A stretch of DNA of 64,000 nucleotides, taken from the NCBI RefSeq assembly GCF_035594765.1, contig NW_026943826.1, positions 12,379,325 to 12,443,324 on the forward strand. The letters are read 5' to 3'. Origin of the DNA: Anolis carolinensis (taxonomy: Eukaryota). Shown piece by piece: positions 35,101 through 58,702 of the stretch. Positions within the stretch are counted from its first letter, which is position 1; each line of letters opens with the position of its first letter. Both the position numbers and the translations under genes were made by a program. The notes below the pieces were generated by a model. It did no database searches. It was given only the letters and a program-made list of their open reading frames with translations, and was not told the DNA's origin.

Positions 35101-38100
35101 GGTGACATCTGGATGCCCTCCTGCAAGACCTGAATGTTCTTACGCACCACCAAAGACCCACATTTCGGCCTCTACTCGTCCACATCTCTCCCACCACCAC
35201 GGGTGACATCTGGATGCCCTCCTGCAAGACCTGAATGTTCTTACGCACCACCAAAGACCCACATTTCGGCCTCTACTCGTCCAGATCTCTCCCACCACCA
35301 CGGGTGACATCTGGATGCCCTCCTGCAAGACCTGAATGTTCTTACGCACCACCAAAGACCCACATTTCGGCCTCTACTCATCCAGATCTCTCCCACCACC
35401 ACGGGTGACATCTGGATGCCCTCCTGCAAGACCTGGATGTTCTTACACACCACCAAAGACCCACATTTCGGCCTCTACTCATCCAGATCTCTCCCACCAC
35501 CACGGGTGACATCTGGATGCCCTCCTGCAAGACCTGGATGTTCTTACACACCACCAAAGACCCACATTTCGGCCTCTACTCATCCAGATCTCTCCCACCA
35601 CCACGGGTGACATCTGGATGCCCTCCTGCAAGACCTGGATGTTCTTACACACCACCAAAGACCCACATTTCGGCCTCTACTCGTCCAGATCTCTCCTACC
35701 ACCACGGGTGACATCTGGATGCCCTCCTGCAAGACCTGGATGTTCTTACACACCACCAAAGACCCACATTTCGGCCTCTACTCGTCCAGATCTCTTCTAC
35801 CACCACGGGTGACATCTGGATGCCCTCCTGCAAGACCTGGATGTTCTTACACACCACCAAAGACCCACATTTTGGCCTTTACTCGTCCAGATCTCTCCCA
35901 CCACCACGGGTGACATCTGGATGCCCTCCTGCAAGACCTGAATGTTCTTACGCACCACCAAAGACCCACATTTCGGCCTCTACTCATCCAGATCTCTCCT
36001 ACCACCACGGGTGACATCTGGATGCCCTCCTGCAAGACCTGGATGTTCTTACACACCACCAAAGACCCACATTTCGGCCTCTACTCATCCAGATCTCTCC
36101 CACCACCACGGGTGACATCTGGATGCCCTCCTGCAAGACCTGGATGTTCTTACACACCACCAAAGACCCACATTTCGGCCTCTACTCATCCAGATCTCTC
36201 CCACCACCACGGGTGACATCTGGATGCCCTCCTGCAAGACCTGGATGTTCTTACACACCACCAAAGACCCACATTTCGGCCTCTACTCGTCCAGATCTCT
36301 CCCACCACCACGGGTGACATCTGGATGCCCTCCTGCAAGACCTGAATGTTCTTACGCACCACCAAAGACCCACATTTCGGCCTCTACTCGTCCAGATCTC
36401 TCCTACCACCACGGGTGACATCTGGATGCCCTCCTGCAAGACCTGGATGTTCTTACACACCACCAAAGACCCACATTTTGGCCTTTACTCATCCAGATCT
36501 CTCCTACCACCACGGGTGACATCTGGATGCCCTCCTGCAAGACCTGGATGTTCTTACACACCACCAAAGACCCACATTTCGGCCTCTACTCGTCCAGATC
36601 TCTCCTACCACCACGGGTGACATCTGGATGCCCTCCTGCAAGACCTGGATGTTCTTACACACCACCAAAGACCCACATTTCGGCCTCTACTCGTCCAGAT
36701 CTCTTCTACCACCACGGGTGACATCTGGATGCCCTCCTGCAAGACCTGGATGTTCTTACACACCACCAAAGACCCACATTTTGGCCTTTACTCATCCAGA
36801 TCTCTCCTACCACCACGGGTGACATCTGGATGCCCTCCTGCAAGACCTGAATGTTCTTACACACCACCAAAGACCCACATTTCGGCCTCTATTCATCCAG
36901 ATCTCTCCCACCACCACGGGTGACATCTGGATGCCCTCCTGCAAGACCTGGATGTTCTTACACACCACCAAAGACCCACATTTCGGCCTCTACTCGTCCA
37001 GATCTCTCCCACCACCACGGGTGACATCTGGATGCCCTCCTGCAAGACCTGAATGTTCTTACGCACCACCAAAGACCCACATTTCGGCCTCTACTCGTCC
37101 AGATCTCTCCTACCACCACGGGTGACATCTGGATGCCCTCCTGCAAGACCTGGATGTTCTTACACACCACCAAAGACCCACATTTTGGCCTTTACTCATC
37201 CAGATCTCTCCTACCACCACGGGTGACATCTGGATGCCCTCCTGCAAGACCTGGATGTTCTTACACACCACCAAAGACCCACATTTCGGCCTCTACTCGT
37301 CCAGATCTCTCCTACCACCACGGGTGACATCCGGATGCCCTCCTGCAAGACCTGGATGTTCTTACACACCACCAAAGACCCACATTTCGGCCTCTACTCG
37401 TCCAGATCTCTCCTACCACCACGGGTGACATCTGGATGCCCTCCTGCAAGACCTGGATGTTCTTACGCACCACCAAAGACCCACATTTCGGCCTCTACTC
37501 GTCCAGATCTCTCCTACCACCACGGGTGACATCTGGATGCCCTCCTGCAAGACCTGGATGTTCTTACACACCACCAAAGACCCACATTTTGGCCTCTACT
37601 CGTCCAGATCTCTCCTACCACCATGGGTGACATCCGGATGCCCCTCAGCAAAACCCGGATGCTCCCGTTTCTTGTTCTTACACACCACCAAAGAATCGAA
37701 AACTCTGAAGGTTTTTGGGCTAATCGAATGAAAGAGGGACATGGGCTGTGGTGCAACTGGTTAGTAGCCAGCAGCAATAAATCTACTGACCGAGAGATCA
37801 TCAATTCGAAACCAGCCTGGGTCAGGGTAAGCTTCTGACCATAAATAGTCCAGCTTGCTGTTGACCTATTCAGCCTGAAAGACAGTTGCACCTGTCGAGT
37901 AGTAAGTTTAGGTACCGCTTTATGAGCGGAGGCTAATTTAACTGATTTACGACACCATAAAAATTGAAAGAATGAGGAAGTACTCCATCAAGGGCTCGGT
38001 GTTTGACCTCACTTGCTCAATGCTATGGGATCCCATGTGTTGTCGTTTAGACAGAGGAGGTTCAAGAGCTTGTAAAAGTTCCTTACTTTGGCCTCGAAGA

Positions 38101-52958: not shown

Positions 52959-55900
52959 TGGTTGAACGTCAGGAGGAACATCATGATGCTCGGCCAGATA
53001 CCTCCTCCGCAGGCCTGGATGAAGAAGATCTTGGGCTTCCCCCTGAGGCTGGGGCAATGGGACCCGTCAAAGAGGCTGACCATCTTCTCCACCGCAAGAC
53101 GGCGGCCGTCCGTGCCGAAAATGCCGCCCGGGAACTGGACGTGGCTGGTCTGGAACGGACACAAGACGGAAACCAGAAGCCACAGCTCAACACATGGATA
53201 ATAAAGTCATATATGAGGACCATGAAGGCATCTAGAAGGTCTCCAACATTGGGACGGGAACACATTGGTGGCTTTCCTACCTGGCAGCCGTGAGAAAGGA
53301 TGACCACAAGGCAGCAGTCCATTGAGCTGTGGTCACGCCTGGCCAGGCTCTGCAACTCCTCCGCAATGGCCTAGAGAGGATGGACAATGTGTGTTCAGTA
53401 GGGTAGGACACTATCAAGGATGATAGCGGCGGCATCAACAACGTCATCAATGTCATCGTTGACACTATAACCAATGACATTACCTACATCATCAACATCA
53501 TCATTGAAGTCATCAACAACATTATCTACATCAATGTCAACGAGATGATCAACATCATCAACAACATTATCTACATCAGCGTCAACAAGATCGTCAACAT
53601 CGACGTCATCGAGAACATTATCTACATCAATGTTAACAAGATTATCAATGTCAACGTCAACGAGATAATCAACATCAACATCGACAACATTATCTACATC
53701 AACGTCAACGAGATTATCAACGTCAATGTCAACAAGACCATCAACATCAACGTCATCAACAACATTATCTACATCAGTGTTAACAAGAAGATCAACATCA
53801 TCAACAACATTATCTACATCAGCGTCAACAAGATTGTCAATATCGACGTCATTGACAACTTTATCTACATCAATGTCAACAAGATTATCAACATCAATGT
53901 CAACGAGATCATCAACATTGACGTCATCGACAACATTATCTACATCGACGTCAACAAGATCGTCAACATCCATGTCATCGACAACATTATCTACATCAAT
54001 GTCAACAAGATTATCAGTGTCAATGTCAACAAGACCATCAACATTGACGTCATCGACAACATTATCTACATCAATGTCAATGAGATGATCAACATTGACG
54101 TCATCAACATTATCTACATTAACGTCAACAAGATCATCAATATTGATGTCATCGACAACATTATCTACATCAGTGTCAACAAGATTATCAACATCAGTGT
54201 CAACAGGACCATCAGCATTGATGTCATCGACATTATCTACATCAGTGCCAACAAGATTATCAACGTCAATGTCAACAAGACCATCAACATCGACGTCATC
54301 GACAACATTATCTACATCAGTGTCAACAAGATTATCAACGTCAATGTCAACAAGACCATCAACATCGACATCATCGACAACATTATCTACATCAATGTCA
54401 ATGAGATGATCAACATTGACGTCATCAACATTATCTACATTAACGTCAACAAGATCATCAATATTGGTGTCATCGACAACATTATCTACATCAGTGTCAA
54501 CAAGATTATCAACATCAGTGTCAACAGGACCATCAGCATTGATGTCATCGACATTATCTACATCAGTGTCAACAAGATTATCAACGTCAATGTCAACAAG
54601 ACCATCAACATCGACGTCATCGACAACATTATCTACATCGACGTCAACGAGATGATCAACATTGATGTCATCGACGACATCTACATCAACAAGATGATCA
54701 ACATCGATGTCATCAACATTATCTACATCGACGTCAACAAGATGATCAACATCAACGTCATCAACGACATTATCTACATCAATGTCGACGAGATGATCAA
54801 CATCAATATATATACTATTGTTGTGGGCCAGAGAACAGCCTGAACCCATAACCCGTCACAGTGTGGGTCCTTCGATTTGGCGCCCAACCTGGGACCGTGT
54901 TTTACGCCGAACCAGGTGTGTGCTCACCTGAGCCGGGAGATCCCGCCGGGTCAAGACCTCGAAGCGCAAGGACTTGAAGCGCTTCTCCATCCGCTCGCAA
55001 TCCAGGTCGGATCCGGAGCGCCGGCCGAGTTGGGAGGCCTCGCTGAAGTTGACGTTGTTGATGATGAGGCAGTAGCCACACGGGTCATGTGTGAGGACAT
55101 AGGCCTGGATATAACAACAACAACAACAAATTAGTATTACATAATATATATATATTATAATATATATTCTTAGTATTATCAATATATATTATATAATAAT
55201 ACATAAATATATATGATGTTTATAATACTTACATATAATATTTATATAAAATATTTACATAAATATATATAATATTTACGATCCATTTATGGGGGGAAAG
55301 AAAAACACTAACTGTTTCCGAATTCCTCCGGGATTTCTCTCCGCCGGAGCCTAGAGATGACAACAAAGTGTAAAATAAACATACACATATATGAATTATA
55401 TTATTTGTCAATAAATAATATTTATATCCATGTTGTTTGTTTATTATTTATAGTATAGCTCTTTCGATTGAGACCCAAAGCAGCTCACAACGTAGTTCGA
55501 AATTGTTAGACTATTAGCATTAAAATATAATATATTATATATATAATATTATTAAATTTAATATAATAATATTATATAATACATTCAGCAAATGAACTTG
55601 ATTTCTTTTTACCGTGAATTGGTGTAATTTCTGGCCTTGGTTCTTGTGGTCTTTCTGCCACTGGAAACAAATTAAAAAGTATTATTTGCATTTAAGCTGA
55701 GAGATAATTTTATCATCTAAGGCGAGATATAAGTCATCATCACTGTAATAATAATAATGATAATACAATATTAAAAATATTTAAAGTATTATAACTCTCG
55801 CTCATAAATAGTAAAATATTGACGTATTTGTTTCAGTGTCGACAGAGCTTCCGACGTATCTACCTGTGTCCGTACGGATGGGGACGGGTCTGATGTGGTC

Positions 55901-56183
55901 CGAAAGACTCTCGGGCACTTGATTGGCTCCCCGACCCAGCAGATCGGCAAGAGCGCCTTGACCCGTTTCCTGGAGGCAGTGCACGAAAACCGGCAAAGCC
56001 CGCTTGCCCCGCGTCTCCAGGTCAATGCACAGTTGTCGCGCCTGCGCACTCCGCGCACCGGACCCCTGCGAAAGGAGACAACACAACTGAAGGTGCGTCT
56101 ACACTGGAGGGCAAATGCGGTTTGGCAACAACCGGGACAGGAGGTTTCGTGGGAGACAAGACATTCCTAGGGAGGAGTCCTCT

Positions 56184-56219
<36 letters not shown>

Positions 56220-58702
56220 ATGATTGAGCCTCGTGGCTCTGTTTCTGACAGGCGTGGGCGTAAGACTCCTCGAGAGTCGGATACTCTCGAGGAGCGAGAG
56301 AGAAAAAGACTGCGAGACATATTTGCAGCACCCTCTGACGAAGAGTCTTTCGAAGGGTTCACGGAGAGAATGGAGGAAGGGCTGGTTAGCTCAGAGGAGG
56401 ATGAGATGGATTGGACTCGGGTAAGGGAGGAATTGGGGGCCACTGGCCATGATGGGGCAGAAGATGAATGGGGACCTTCAGGATTAGACCCATGGCGTAG
56501 CTGGAGGGATGGGACGGGATCCACAGCTGGAGATGCTGTTGGGCGTAGTCAGAGGTGTTCCAGCTCTGACGAGGAAAGTGATGAGGAAACGCCCGGGTTA
56601 AGGAGGGCAGCTGACAGTGATGAAGATTTGTAACTGGCATAAAATGGGGCTTGGGAGCAATTGCAAATTGCGTCGGGCAAGGTAATCTGGGCAAACGCTT
56701 GGGATTCGTGTGTGTGTGTGGGACGCTTCCCTGAAGACTTGTGTACTTTCCTGTGCTGAGACGTAAGTTGATTGGAATCCAGGGTCAGACGGCGGGAGGG
56801 ATTGTGTGGGCATTTGTTTGTGCAAACCTGTGCTTACTCTTATTAGCTTGACCTTCCGTCGTCTTCTTGACGGACGCCATCTCCTGCTTTGAGAACTCGG
56901 ACTGAACTGACCACGGCTTGTCTTCCCCCCTTCTTGGACTTGGAAAAACTACAAACGTCTGCTTCTGGCTTTGATCTACGGAACGGAACTGGTCTACTCT
57001 ACTGCTAAAATCCCTGGCTGATTGTTCGTGTTGGAATCCTGTCTGCTGTGTGTGTGTGTGGGAGCGACGCAAGTTACTCTAAACACAGTGTTGGCAGCAG
57101 AGAGGAATCTGCTGCCAATTAGTTGCATTCTTTATCCTTTGTTCCTTGGCTTTCGTTTTGTTTATACCCAGGCTGAAGAAAGCAGTTTGTTTTTACCCGG
57201 ATTAAACTCCGGTTTAATCCGGTTTATCTTTTGAACATTTACTTTTGCCCCTTTTTTGCTCCTAAAGGCAAAAATTGCCTGGCCCTTGTGTTTTACGGGC
57301 GTTTTTGAGTTCTGTAATCTAATAAACTCTGTTACTTTGAATCTNNNNNNNNNNNNNNNNNNNNNNNNNNNNNNNNNNNNNNNNNNNNNNNNNNNNNNNN
57401 NNNNNNNNNNNNNNNNNNNNNNNNNNNNNNNNNNNNNNNNNNNNNNNNNNNNNNNNNNNNNNNNNNNNNNNNNNNNNNNNNACATATACNNNNNNNNNNN
57501 NNNNNNNNNNNNNNNNNNNNNNNNNNNNNNNNNNNNNNNNNNNNNNNNNNNNNNNNNNNNNNNNNNNNNNNNNNNNNNNNNNNNNNNNNNNNNNNNNNNN
57601 NNNNNNNNNNNNNNNNNNNNNNNNNNNNNNNNNNNNNNNNNNNNNNNNNNNNNNNNNNNNNNNNNNNNATATACATACATAAAATGTATNNNNNNNNNNN
57701 NNNNNNNNNNNNNNNNNNNNNNNNNNNNNNNNNNNNNNNNNNNNNNNNNNNNNNNNNNNNNNNNNNNNNNNNNNNNNNNNNNNNNNNNNNNNNNNNNNNN
57801 NNNNNNNNNNNNNNNNNNNNNNNNNNNNNNNNNNNNNNNNNNNNNNNNNNNNNNNNNNNNNNNNNNNNNNNNNNNNNNNNNNNNNNNNNNNNNNNNNNAT
57901 ATATATACATATAATATATTGGGTGGGATATATAAATGTATATATACACACACACACATATATGTTATGTATTAGATGGCATATATAAACATATATACAC
58001 ACACATATATAATGTATTAGATGGCATATATAAATATATATGCATACACATATAATGTATTAGATGACATATATACACATAATGTATTAGATGATACACA
58101 CACACACATATAATGTATTAGATGACATACNNNNNNNNNNNNNNNNNNNNNNNNNNNNNNNNNNNNNNNNNNNNNNNNNNNNNNNNNNNNNNNNNNNNNN
58201 NNNNNNNNNNNNNNNNNNNNNNNNNNNNNNNNNNNNNNNNNNNNNNNNNNNNNNNNNNNNNNNNNNNNNNNNNNNNNNNNNNNNNNNNNNNNNNNNTATG
58301 TATAGTAATGGATGGCCTATATAGAGAGAGAGATAGATCTATTTTCATAGAAATATATTATTATATATTTATATATAATATATAATAATTATATATATAT
58401 ATAATTATTATATATTTATATTTTGCCTCTCTTCTCAGTATCTTCATAGAAATATATTATTATATATTTATTATATATTTATATATAATATATAATAATT
58501 ATATATATTTATATGTAATTATATATTGATCTTTGGCCCTCTCTTCTCAAGGCCTTGAAAGGCAGTGGACCTGGATCTCCTCGATCATGTCCTGGGAGAA
58601 GATCCCCTCCTGCAGCAGGAGGTCCCAAAGGGGATCCACTCGCAGCTCCTTCACCAGCCGGACCCGGTTCCTTCGAAGCAAAGCCCGGTGGGACTCCTCC
58701 AT
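51621..58702 (-). CDS. CASP9: Caspase-9, 403 aa, 10 exons
   Basis: Exons 58702-58571, 56065-55864, 55660-55613, 55350-55313, 55104-54928, 53370-53281, 53149-53002, 52897-52724, 52009-51900, 51713-51621. CARD ([21 protein letters not shown]), ILSHG, QACGG active site, [12 protein letters not shown]; head-to-head with DNAJC16. Confidence 0.95.
53420..54810. repeat. Triplet-periodic low-complexity repeat (ATCAACATCGAC-type) in CASP9 intron
   Basis: Units such as GACAACATTATCTACATCAATGTCAACAAGAT; produces long D/V/N and I/N ORFs on both strands. Confidence 0.85.
56216..57484 (+). mobile_element. Probable solo LTR (Gypsy/ERV-type) in (TA)n within CASP9 intron 1; 3' end partly in gap
   Basis: Abrupt start TGTTATG after (TA)n; TATA-like CATAAAA 56638; AATAAA 57321; ACA followed by TA repeat at 57482-57484 after the gap. 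Confidence 0.65.
56220..56633 (+). CDS. LTR-encoded acidic 137-aa ORF with FxGF (LEDGF-IBD/TND-binding-type) motif
   Basis: Intact ORF MIEPRG...[18 protein letters not shown]...DSDEDL*; expression not shown. Confidence 0.45.
   Translation: MIEPRGSVSDRRGRKTPRESDTLEERERKRLRDIFAAPSDEESFEGFTERMEEGLVSSEEDEMDWTRVREELGATGHDGAEDEWGPSGLDPWRSWRDGTGSTAGDAVGRSQRCSSSDEESDEETPGLRRAADSDEDL

What the first reader, a model, noticed from the sequence alone, without database searches (positions are those of the whole stretch)
56216..56633. LTR-encoded peptide carrying a LEDGF/TND-binding motif resembling CDCA7L/JPO2: candidate retrotransposon chromatin-tethering module
Seen: a probable LTR starts TG at 56216 and an intact 137-aa acidic ORF begins 4 bp later, with the frame also open across the LTR boundary; it contains [18 protein letters not shown] (DIF...EGF at 56316-56360) followed by Ser/acidic CK2-like tracts ([21 protein letters not shown]). 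Established: acidic F-x-G-F motifs (IBM/TIM) in JPO2/CDCA7L, POGZ, MLL1, IWS1 and ASK bind the LEDGF/p75 integrase-binding domain and related TFIIS N-terminal domains, the pocket HIV integrase uses; from memory the JPO2 motif reads DIFNAPSDDEEFVGF, nearly identical. Inference: in the full-length element this is either the C-terminal tail of pol/integrase running into the 3' LTR U3 or a small accessory protein, mimicking or captured from a host motif to target integration to transcribed chromatin (analogous to Ty5-Sir4 or MLV-BET). Its position inside an expressed gene fits but is a single case.
Basis: partly seen in the sequence, partly recalled or inferred. Interest (0 to 1): 0.9.

Follow-up and report, generated by a model that had tools for sequence, protein, structure and literature searches.

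The report
Integrase tail with LEDGF-binding-like motif
A solo LTR in a lizard caspase-9 intron preserves the LTR-encoded end of a Gypsy integrase: a disordered acidic tail whose most strongly conserved stretch closely copies the peptide that the host protein JPO2 uses to dock on the chromatin reader LEDGF, which suggests, without proof yet, that this retrotransposon chooses its insertion sites the way HIV does.

Summary
TGTT at 56216 opens an LTR and a 137-codon ORF runs 56220-56633. In full-length Anolis carolinensis copies the 1201-aa pol reads in frame through the polypurine tract into the 3' LTR and ends at this ORF's stop, so the peptide is the integrase C-terminal tail. The window copy is a solo LTR, antisense in CASP9 intron 1, and is a relic rather than a gene.

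- **Selection:** the tail is under purifying selection (dN/dS 0.10-0.24). It is strongest on residues 22-50 (pN/pS 0.10 at pS 0.60). FxGF is kept in 23 of 23 distinct pol tails.
- **Resemblance:** the only PDB match is the LEDGF IBD-JPO2 M1 fusion 6EMO (12 of 20 identical, same spacing, E about 1).
- **Fold:** AlphaFold gives one helix, then an acidic linker and FxGF in disorder, which is the layout of a TND-interacting motif.
- **Relatives:** the family sits inside chromodomain-bearing lizard chromoviruses but has lost the chromodomain. Podarcis relatives keep similar motifs behind theirs.

First-stage readers of this scan noted the same idea on other DNA of this genome (s1-517342, s1-517344, s1-519617).

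The parts
56187..56215 (.). (TA)n microsatellite flanking the LTR start; host intron, not part of the element
56216..57345 (+). Solo LTR of a Ty3/gypsy family. It starts TGTT. About the last 25 nt and the target-site duplication lie in the N-masked stretch and were left unread.
   Evidence: Aligns end to end with both 1141-bp LTRs of the full-length copy in L001. No gag or pol anywhere in the window.
56220..56633 (+). 137-codon ORF: the LTR-encoded C-terminal tail of the family's integrase
56286..56324 (+). Residues 23-35, predicted amphipathic helix ending in L31, I34, F35 (the hydrophobic anchor of a TIM)
   Evidence: AlphaFold2 helix 23-36, pLDDT about 80 in an otherwise disordered model
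56325..56348 (+). Residues 36-43, eight-residue acidic linker with Ser39 in an S-D-E-E (CK2-type) context
   Evidence: same length as the linker of JPO2 M1
56349..56360 (+). Residues 44-47, FEGF (the FxGF element)
   Evidence: F-x-G-F in 23 of 23 distinct pol tails; invariant F44, G46, F47 even against the 31%-identical P0007
56487..56558 (+). Residues 90-113, second strongly conserved block (Trp-rich, then G/S/A-rich); function unknown
   Evidence: pN/pS 0.11; W92, W95, R96, D97, C113 invariant
56635..56694 (+). Conserved non-coding block just after the stop, with a TATA-like CATAAAAT at 56638-56645. Candidate core promoter, which would make nearly all of U3 coding (inference).
   Evidence: 80% of columns invariant in four diverged LTRs, against 12-45% further on
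57321..57326 (+). AATAAA near the LTR end; candidate polyadenylation signal (inference)
55934..56068 (-). Context: CARD-coding exon of a CASP9-like gene on the opposite strand; the LTR lies in the intron next to it
   Evidence: Pfam CARD 5e-6, and Peptidase_C14 for the exon at 54856-55182

Best explanation
The ORF is the end of a retrotransposon integrase, and that end is encoded by the LTR.

Shown:
- In this Anolis Ty3/gypsy family, pol (PR-RT-RNaseH-IN-SH3) does not stop before the 3' LTR. It reads through the polypurine tract and 418 nt into the LTR.
- Every LTR therefore carries the 137 codons, including the solo LTR in this window, which is an inert relic.
- The family descends from chromodomain-bearing lizard chromoviruses and has lost the chromodomain.

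Inferred:
- The tail is an intrinsically disordered, acidic, probably CK2-phosphorylated region.
- Its functional core is a short helix, an eight-residue acidic linker and FxGF. This is a TND-interacting / IBD-binding motif almost superimposable on motif M1 of JPO2/CDCA7L.
- The most likely mechanism is that the motif docks integrase, and with it the intasome, onto the TFIIS-N-type domain (IBD) of the H3K36me2/3 readers LEDGF/PSIP1 or HRP2/HDGFL2. Insertions would then be tethered to transcribed gene bodies. This would replace chromodomain-based targeting and converge on the lentiviral strategy by mimicking a host ligand.
For: Anatomy:
- L001 holds a full-length copy with 1141-bp LTRs 99.7% identical and a 5-bp duplication ATGTG.
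- gag is at 6381-7181 and a 1201-aa pol at 7181-10786, whose last 137 codons lie in the 3' LTR.
- A second copy in L003 does the same. Twenty-three distinct pol proteins end in this tail.

Selection:
- dN/dS between LTR copies is 0.10-0.24 with dS up to 0.85; binomial p is 1e-8 to 1e-9.
- The motif segment has the lowest pN/pS (0.10) and the highest pS (0.60).
- The coding part of the LTR has no indels, while the rest has many.

Motif:
- The sole PDB match, by sequence and by profile, is 6emo_A, the LEDGF IBD-JPO2 M1 fusion. It is 12/20 identical with the same Phe-to-Phe spacing.
- AlphaFold predicts helix 23-36 in a disordered chain.
- These are the features that define TIMs, and FxGF is reported as essential for LEDGF/HRP2 partners (PMC9987994).

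Recurrence:
- P0007, only 31% identical, keeps the helix, linker and FxGF, and adds two further FxGF-like motifs (TFEGF, TFVEF).
- In two Podarcis chromovirus clusters, 17 of 17 members with tails keep two such motifs each.

Position:
- The integrase C-terminus is where the chromodomain sits in the nearest relatives.
Against:
- The PDB match is weak on its own (E 1.6 and 0.66).
- Other TNDs (TFIIS, IWS1, Elongin A, PPP1R10, MED26) or an unrelated partner could be the target.
- A second block (residues 90-113) is as conserved as the motif and is unexplained.
- Three insertion sites were looked at. One is in a gene intron, and no other gene was listed within 10 kb of the two in L001 and L003. 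That shows no bias either way.
- Transcription was not demonstrated: the four runs laid were contigs only guessed to be RNA.
Confidence: 0.5

Rival explanations
1. The tail carries a real, selected short linear motif, but its partner is not LEDGF/HRP2. It could be another TFIIS-N-type domain of the elongation machinery or an unrelated acidic-peptide reader. Its role could be nuclear import, coupling to RNA polymerase II, particle assembly or integrase stability rather than target choice.
For: Purifying selection shows function, not partner. TIMs as a class serve several TNDs (PMC9987994). The Trp-rich block 90-113 and the WTRV block are equally conserved and belong to no known motif. In the Podarcis relatives the first motif has Leu or Met in place of the first Phe.
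Against: FxGF is the feature reported as specific and essential for the LEDGF/HRP2 subclass. The closest solved peptide is a LEDGF ligand, with identical spacing.
Confidence: 0.25
2. The ORF is also, or instead, a separate small LTR-encoded accessory protein. It would start at the conserved ATG four bases into the LTR and be made from a subgenomic, spliced or read-through RNA.
For: The ATG is invariant in all copies. Stand-alone 137-aa models exist in databases (P0001). The 5' LTR copy of L001 is open too.
Against: The frame is continuous with pol in every full-length protein seen. The ATG falls within the conserved LTR terminus TGTTATG, so it may be kept for that reason. If the TATA-like box after the stop is the promoter, the ORF in a 5' or solo LTR lies upstream of the transcription start. 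The 5' LTR copy in L003 has lost FxGF while its 3' copy keeps it.
Confidence: 0.07
3. The conservation reflects cis-acting DNA or RNA constraints of U3 (enhancers, integrase-binding terminus), and the JPO2-like string is coincidence.
For: The ORF overlaps what should be U3. Synonymous change is low in some stretches (pS 0.21-0.24 for residues 1-21 and 51-72). The PDB E-value is about 1.
Against: In the motif segment synonymous sites are nearly saturated (pS 0.60) while the protein is kept (pN 0.06). The pattern, not the nucleotides, recurs in families 31-40% identical. The shuffle frequency is 0.02-0.04%.
Confidence: 0.06
4. The motif was captured from the host CDCA7L gene rather than evolved by convergence. 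This concerns origin and is compatible with the best explanation.
For: Among solved IBD ligands only JPO2 M1 is matched, at 12 of 20 residues.
Against: An exhaustive HMMER search of 1.84 billion representatives found no CDCA7L-like protein, so there is no similarity beyond the motif. Related families carry the same pattern with different residues, as expected for a motif evolving under pattern constraint. The Anolis CDCA7L sequence could not be obtained here.
Confidence: 0.15

Closest known systems
JPO2/CDCA7L motif M1 bound to the LEDGF/p75 integrase-binding domain (PDB 6EMO)
   Same: Helix ending D-I-F, eight-residue acidic linker with A-P-S-D, then F-x-G-F. Twelve of 20 residues are identical, in a disordered context with CK2-type serines.
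   Different: It sits at the C-terminus of a retrotransposon integrase, not the N-terminus of a zinc-finger host protein. There is no other similarity to CDCA7L, and binding is untested.
HIV-1 integrase and LEDGF/p75
   Same: An integrase would be tethered to H3K36me-marked gene bodies through the same domain of the same host reader.
   Different: HIV uses the folded catalytic-core dimer interface. Here a linear host-ligand mimic in a disordered tail would do the job.
Gammaretroviral (MLV) integrase C-terminal tail and BET proteins; Ty5 integrase targeting domain and Sir4; Ty1 integrase tail and AC40
   Same: A short peptide at the integrase C-terminus binds a host chromatin or transcription factor and sets target choice. 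Ty5's peptide is phospho-regulated, as TIMs are.
   Different: The host partner and motif class differ. Here the peptide is encoded inside the LTR.
Chromovirus integrase chromodomain (e.g. MAGGY, Tf1, plant chromoviruses)
   Same: Same position in the polyprotein, and the same clade of elements by pol phylogeny.
   Different: The chromodomain is absent in this family (Pfam). The Podarcis relatives have both a chromodomain and FxGF-type motifs.
POGZ, a pogo-transposase-derived host protein that binds LEDGF through an IBM
   Same: A transposase-related protein with an IBD-binding motif near its C-terminus.
   Different: It is a domesticated DNA-transposon gene, not an active retroelement.

Membership tests
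Ty3/gypsy (Metaviridae) LTR retrotransposon | Direct LTRs with TG...CA ends and a short target-site duplication | tested here: met
   L001: 1141-bp LTRs, 99.7% identical, TGTT...ACA, ATGTG on both sides. The window copy shows the start only, because its end is masked.
Ty3/gypsy (Metaviridae) LTR retrotransposon | gag, then pol, with the order protease, RT, RNase H, integrase | tested here: met
   Pfam on L001 gag and pol
Chromovirus (chromodomain-bearing Ty3/gypsy) | Chromodomain at the integrase C-terminus | tested here: not met
   No PF00385 at E up to 0.01 in the L001 pol, while P0005, P0063, P0066 and P0074 have it
Chromovirus (chromodomain-bearing Ty3/gypsy) | Phylogenetic position of pol within the clade | tested here: met
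   Quick ML tree on RT to SH3: sister to Podarcis P0005 (SH-aLRT 96), inside a squamate clade of chromodomain bearers (98). This points to chromodomain loss.
TND-interacting motif / IBD-binding motif (LEDGF-HRP2 subclass) | Short alpha-helix presenting Phe/Val/Leu/Ile | tested here: met
   Predicted helix 23-36 with L31, I34, F35. This is a prediction, not a structure.
TND-interacting motif / IBD-binding motif (LEDGF-HRP2 subclass) | Flexible acidic linker of 8-16 residues with Ser/Thr | tested here: met
   Eight residues, four acidic, two Ser; definition from PMC9987994
TND-interacting motif / IBD-binding motif (LEDGF-HRP2 subclass) | FxGF | tested here: met
   FEGF; F-x-G-F in 23 of 23 tails
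TND-interacting motif / IBD-binding motif (LEDGF-HRP2 subclass) | Physical, FxGF-dependent binding to a TND/IBD; enhancement by CK2 phosphorylation | not testable with these tools
   No IBD or TND sequence could be obtained.
CDCA7L/JPO2 homologue or captured fragment | Similarity beyond the motif, or the C-terminal zinc-finger domain | tested here: not met
   Pfam gave nothing. The exhaustive HMMER search found only element tails. The PDB construct ends at the motif, so flanks could not be compared.
LTR-encoded accessory gene (as MMTV sag, or nef overlapping U3) | Own initiation and own mRNA, separate from pol | tested here: inconclusive
   The ORF is continuous with pol in all full-length copies. 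No RNA data of sufficient quality.

The most novel reading that the evidence does not exclude
A squamate clade of chromoviruses writes its integration-targeting module into the LTR. The U3-encoded integrase tail carries interchangeable mimics of host chromatin ligands: a JPO2-type motif for LEDGF/HRP2 in this family and in Podarcis relatives, and an HMGN-like RRSAR(L/I) string in sister families. Target choice could then be swapped by LTR recombination. This family would have given up the chromodomain for LEDGF-type tethering, independently reaching the lentiviral solution.
Probability: 0.35. Interest if true: 0.9.

Novelty: new variant of a known kind. Interest (0 to 1): 0.8.

Why it matters
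Host-factor tethering by an integrase tail is known for MLV, Ty1 and Ty5, and LEDGF tethering is known for lentiviruses. I found no report of a retrotransposon using a mimic of a cellular TND/IBD ligand (literature searches).

If the motif binds, three things follow:
- It would show convergent use of LEDGF/HRP2 outside retroviruses.
- It would give a natural experiment on target choice, because sister families carry a chromodomain, an HMGN-like string, or FxGF motifs.
- It would show that target specificity can be encoded in U3, where coding, promoter and integrase-recognition constraints overlap.

It would also offer a compact, portable peptide for directing integration to transcribed chromatin.

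Tried and rejected
- **Pfam:** found nothing on the tail or on the sister-family tails. My first Pfam call failed because of a one-base coordinate slip.
- **ESM Atlas:** the feature search gave no usable hit.
- **PDB searches:** P0007 alone gave only chance hits. The P0063 tail gave none, so the HMGN-like string stays a resemblance only.
- **P0007 locus:** not on record.
- **Papers:** the two primary papers on IBMs/TIMs are not held, so the motif definition rests on the review PMC9987994.
- **Reads:** all four runs were Logan contigs only guessed to be RNA. They show that the LTR family is very abundant and that 8 of the 12 listed family-wide differences in the ORF are at third codon positions. 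They do not show transcription, ends or strand.
- **Host exon at this locus:** rejected. The sequence is a repeated LTR with no gag or pol nearby, on the strand opposite to CASP9.
- **P0008 ('OGFRL1 isoform'):** this is only a mis-named RT fragment.
- **Masked stretch:** the N-masked stretch after 57345 was left unread, so the LTR end and duplication in the window are not determined.

Full report
**What is in the window**

The sequence at 56216 reads TGTT directly after a (TA)n run. ATG follows at 56220 and the frame stays open for 137 codons to TAA at 56631-56633. The upstream extension of the frame to 56115 comes only from translating the microsatellite and intron.

On the opposite strand, 55802-56086 encodes a CARD and 54856-55182 a caspase domain. 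The element therefore lies antisense in the first intron of a CASP9-like gene. From 57346 the sequence is N-masked and was left so. The last 25 or so bases of the LTR and any target duplication cannot be read.

**It is an LTR, and the ORF is the end of pol**

A protein search found a 192-aa Anolis carolinensis model with an integrase SH3 domain joined to the first half of the peptide. Its locus, L001, holds a complete element:
- two 1141-bp LTRs 99.7% identical, with TGTT...ACA ends and a five-base duplication;
- gag, 266 aa;
- a 1201-aa pol in the -1 frame.

Pol carries protease, RT, RNase H, zinc-binding and catalytic integrase domains and a Tf2-type SH3 domain. It then runs through the purine-rich tract straight into the 3' LTR and stops 418 nt inside it. 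A second copy in L003 does the same, although its pol is broken upstream.

The window holds no gag or pol. Its copy is therefore a solo LTR, and the ORF here is a young relic, not a gene.

**Conservation**

Two UniRef clusters of Anolis 'Gypsy integrase-like' proteins (46 and 75 members) gave 23 distinct full tails. They are 70-96% identical to the window's, all exactly 137 residues, and all have F-x-G-F.

Between six LTR copies, Nei-Gojobori dN/dS is 0.10-0.24 with dS up to 0.85. Non-synonymous changes are far fewer than neutrality predicts (p about 1e-8).

By segment:
- Residues 22-50, which hold the motif, combine the highest synonymous divergence (pS 0.60) with the lowest pN/pS (0.10). The constraint there acts on the protein, not the DNA.
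- Residues 90-113 are similarly constrained (0.11).
- Residues 1-21 and 73-89 are loose (about 0.6).

The coding part of the LTR has no gap columns among four diverged LTRs. A 60-nt block after the stop, with a TATA-like box, is also conserved, and the remainder is riddled with indels. Within one L003 element, the untranslated 5' LTR copy has lost FxGF while the 3' copy keeps it.

**The motif**

Searching all PDB chain sequences returned a single match, both with the tail and with a profile of 20 tails. The match is 6emo_A, the LEDGF/p75 IBD fused to JPO2 motif M1, aligned over residues 29-48 with 12 of 20 identities and the same eight-residue gap between the two Phe anchors. The E-values (1.6 and 0.66) are not significant alone.

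AlphaFold2 on the alignment gives a mostly disordered chain (mean pLDDT 59) with one confident helix at 23-36, ending just before the linker. The review PMC9987994 defines TND-interacting motifs as a helix with hydrophobic anchors, an acidic linker of 8-16 residues often phosphorylated by CK2, and an FxGF. It reports FxGF as essential for all known LEDGF and HRP2 partners. All three sequence features are present.

The tail has only three Phe, and all three lie in the motif. The composite pattern arises in 0.02-0.04% of shuffles.

**Relatives**

An exhaustive HMMER search found the tail only in Anolis. One hit, P0007, is 31% identical. It keeps the helix, linker and FxGF and has two further FxGF-like motifs.

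A search with integrase plus tail showed that nearly all relatives at about 50% identity carry a chromodomain. These come from frogs, Podarcis and other Anolis families. This family does not carry one.

A tree built on RT to SH3, with tails excluded, places it as sister to a Podarcis chromovirus, inside a squamate clade of chromodomain bearers. The chromodomain was therefore lost.

Only this squamate clade has long tails after the SH3 or chromodomain. More than 50 other chromoviruses end about 95-110 residues after the SH3 motif.

In two Podarcis muralis clusters, all 17 members that retain a tail have two helix-acidic-linker motifs behind the chromodomain, one ending (L/M)EGF and one ending F(R/W)GF. 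Sister families instead carry RRSAR(L/I) near the end of the tail. Earlier notes of this scan liken that string to HMGN. I saw the string, but Pfam and PDB searches gave no support.

**Reading**

The anatomy and the selection are shown. The mechanism is inferred from the motif's form, its position where targeting modules of other integrases sit, and its recurrence. That mechanism is docking of integrase on the IBD of LEDGF/HRP2 and hence insertion into H3K36me-marked gene bodies.

I put the mechanism at about one in two. About one in four goes to a different partner for a real motif.

No binding, expression or insertion-bias test could be done. The sequencing runs available were contigs of uncertain type, and no IBD sequence could be obtained for a complex prediction. 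Literature searches found no earlier report of such a motif in a retrotransposon.

First-stage notes on other DNA of the same genome make the same suggestion. They are not independent evidence.

Noticed in passing
window 32224-37700 (approx.): Long tandem array of a 101-bp unit, at least 53 overlapping 300-nt registers at 96-97% identity: a satellite block between the CTRC-like and taste-receptor-like genes.
   Followed up: no
window 53395-54849: About 1.4 kb of imperfect short repeats that stay open in both strands (Val/Asp-rich on one, Ile/Asn-rich on the other). Probably a minisatellite in a CASP9 intron, not a gene.
   Followed up: no
window 56487-56558 and tails of P0003-P0035: A second block of the tail (Trp-rich, then Gly/Ser/Ala-rich, ending in Cys) is as strongly conserved as the FxGF motif and matches nothing known. 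It could be a second interaction motif or overlap a U3 control element.
   Followed up: partly
P0005, P0063, P0068 (Podarcis and Anolis chromovirus pols), C-terminal 20-30 residues: Sister families end their long tails with RRSARL or RRSARI followed by basic residues, kept in 5 of 5 P0005-cluster members with tails. Earlier scan notes call it HMGN-like. Pfam and PDB searches found nothing.
   Followed up: partly
L003 10525-11562 and 11622-17751: A solo LTR of a diverged subfamily (73% identical) lies 60 bp from a full-length, frame-broken copy of the same family in the opposite orientation: neighbouring or nested insertions.
   Followed up: no
P0006 and P0008 (A. carolinensis RefSeq models): Annotation artefacts. 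P0006 fuses a LINE-like ORF fragment to the LTR ORF. P0008, named opioid growth factor receptor-like 1 isoform X4, is an RT fragment of this element.
   Followed up: partly
window 56682-56690 and the same place in L001/L003 LTRs: A conserved CAAG|GTAAT just after the TATA-like block resembles a 5' splice site. It could matter for subgenomic RNAs of the element.
   Followed up: no
window 57197-57256: A conserved island in the otherwise variable part of the LTR contains an inverted repeat (CCGGATTAAAC...GTTTAATCCGG), a possible RNA hairpin in R.
   Followed up: no
   Followed up: no
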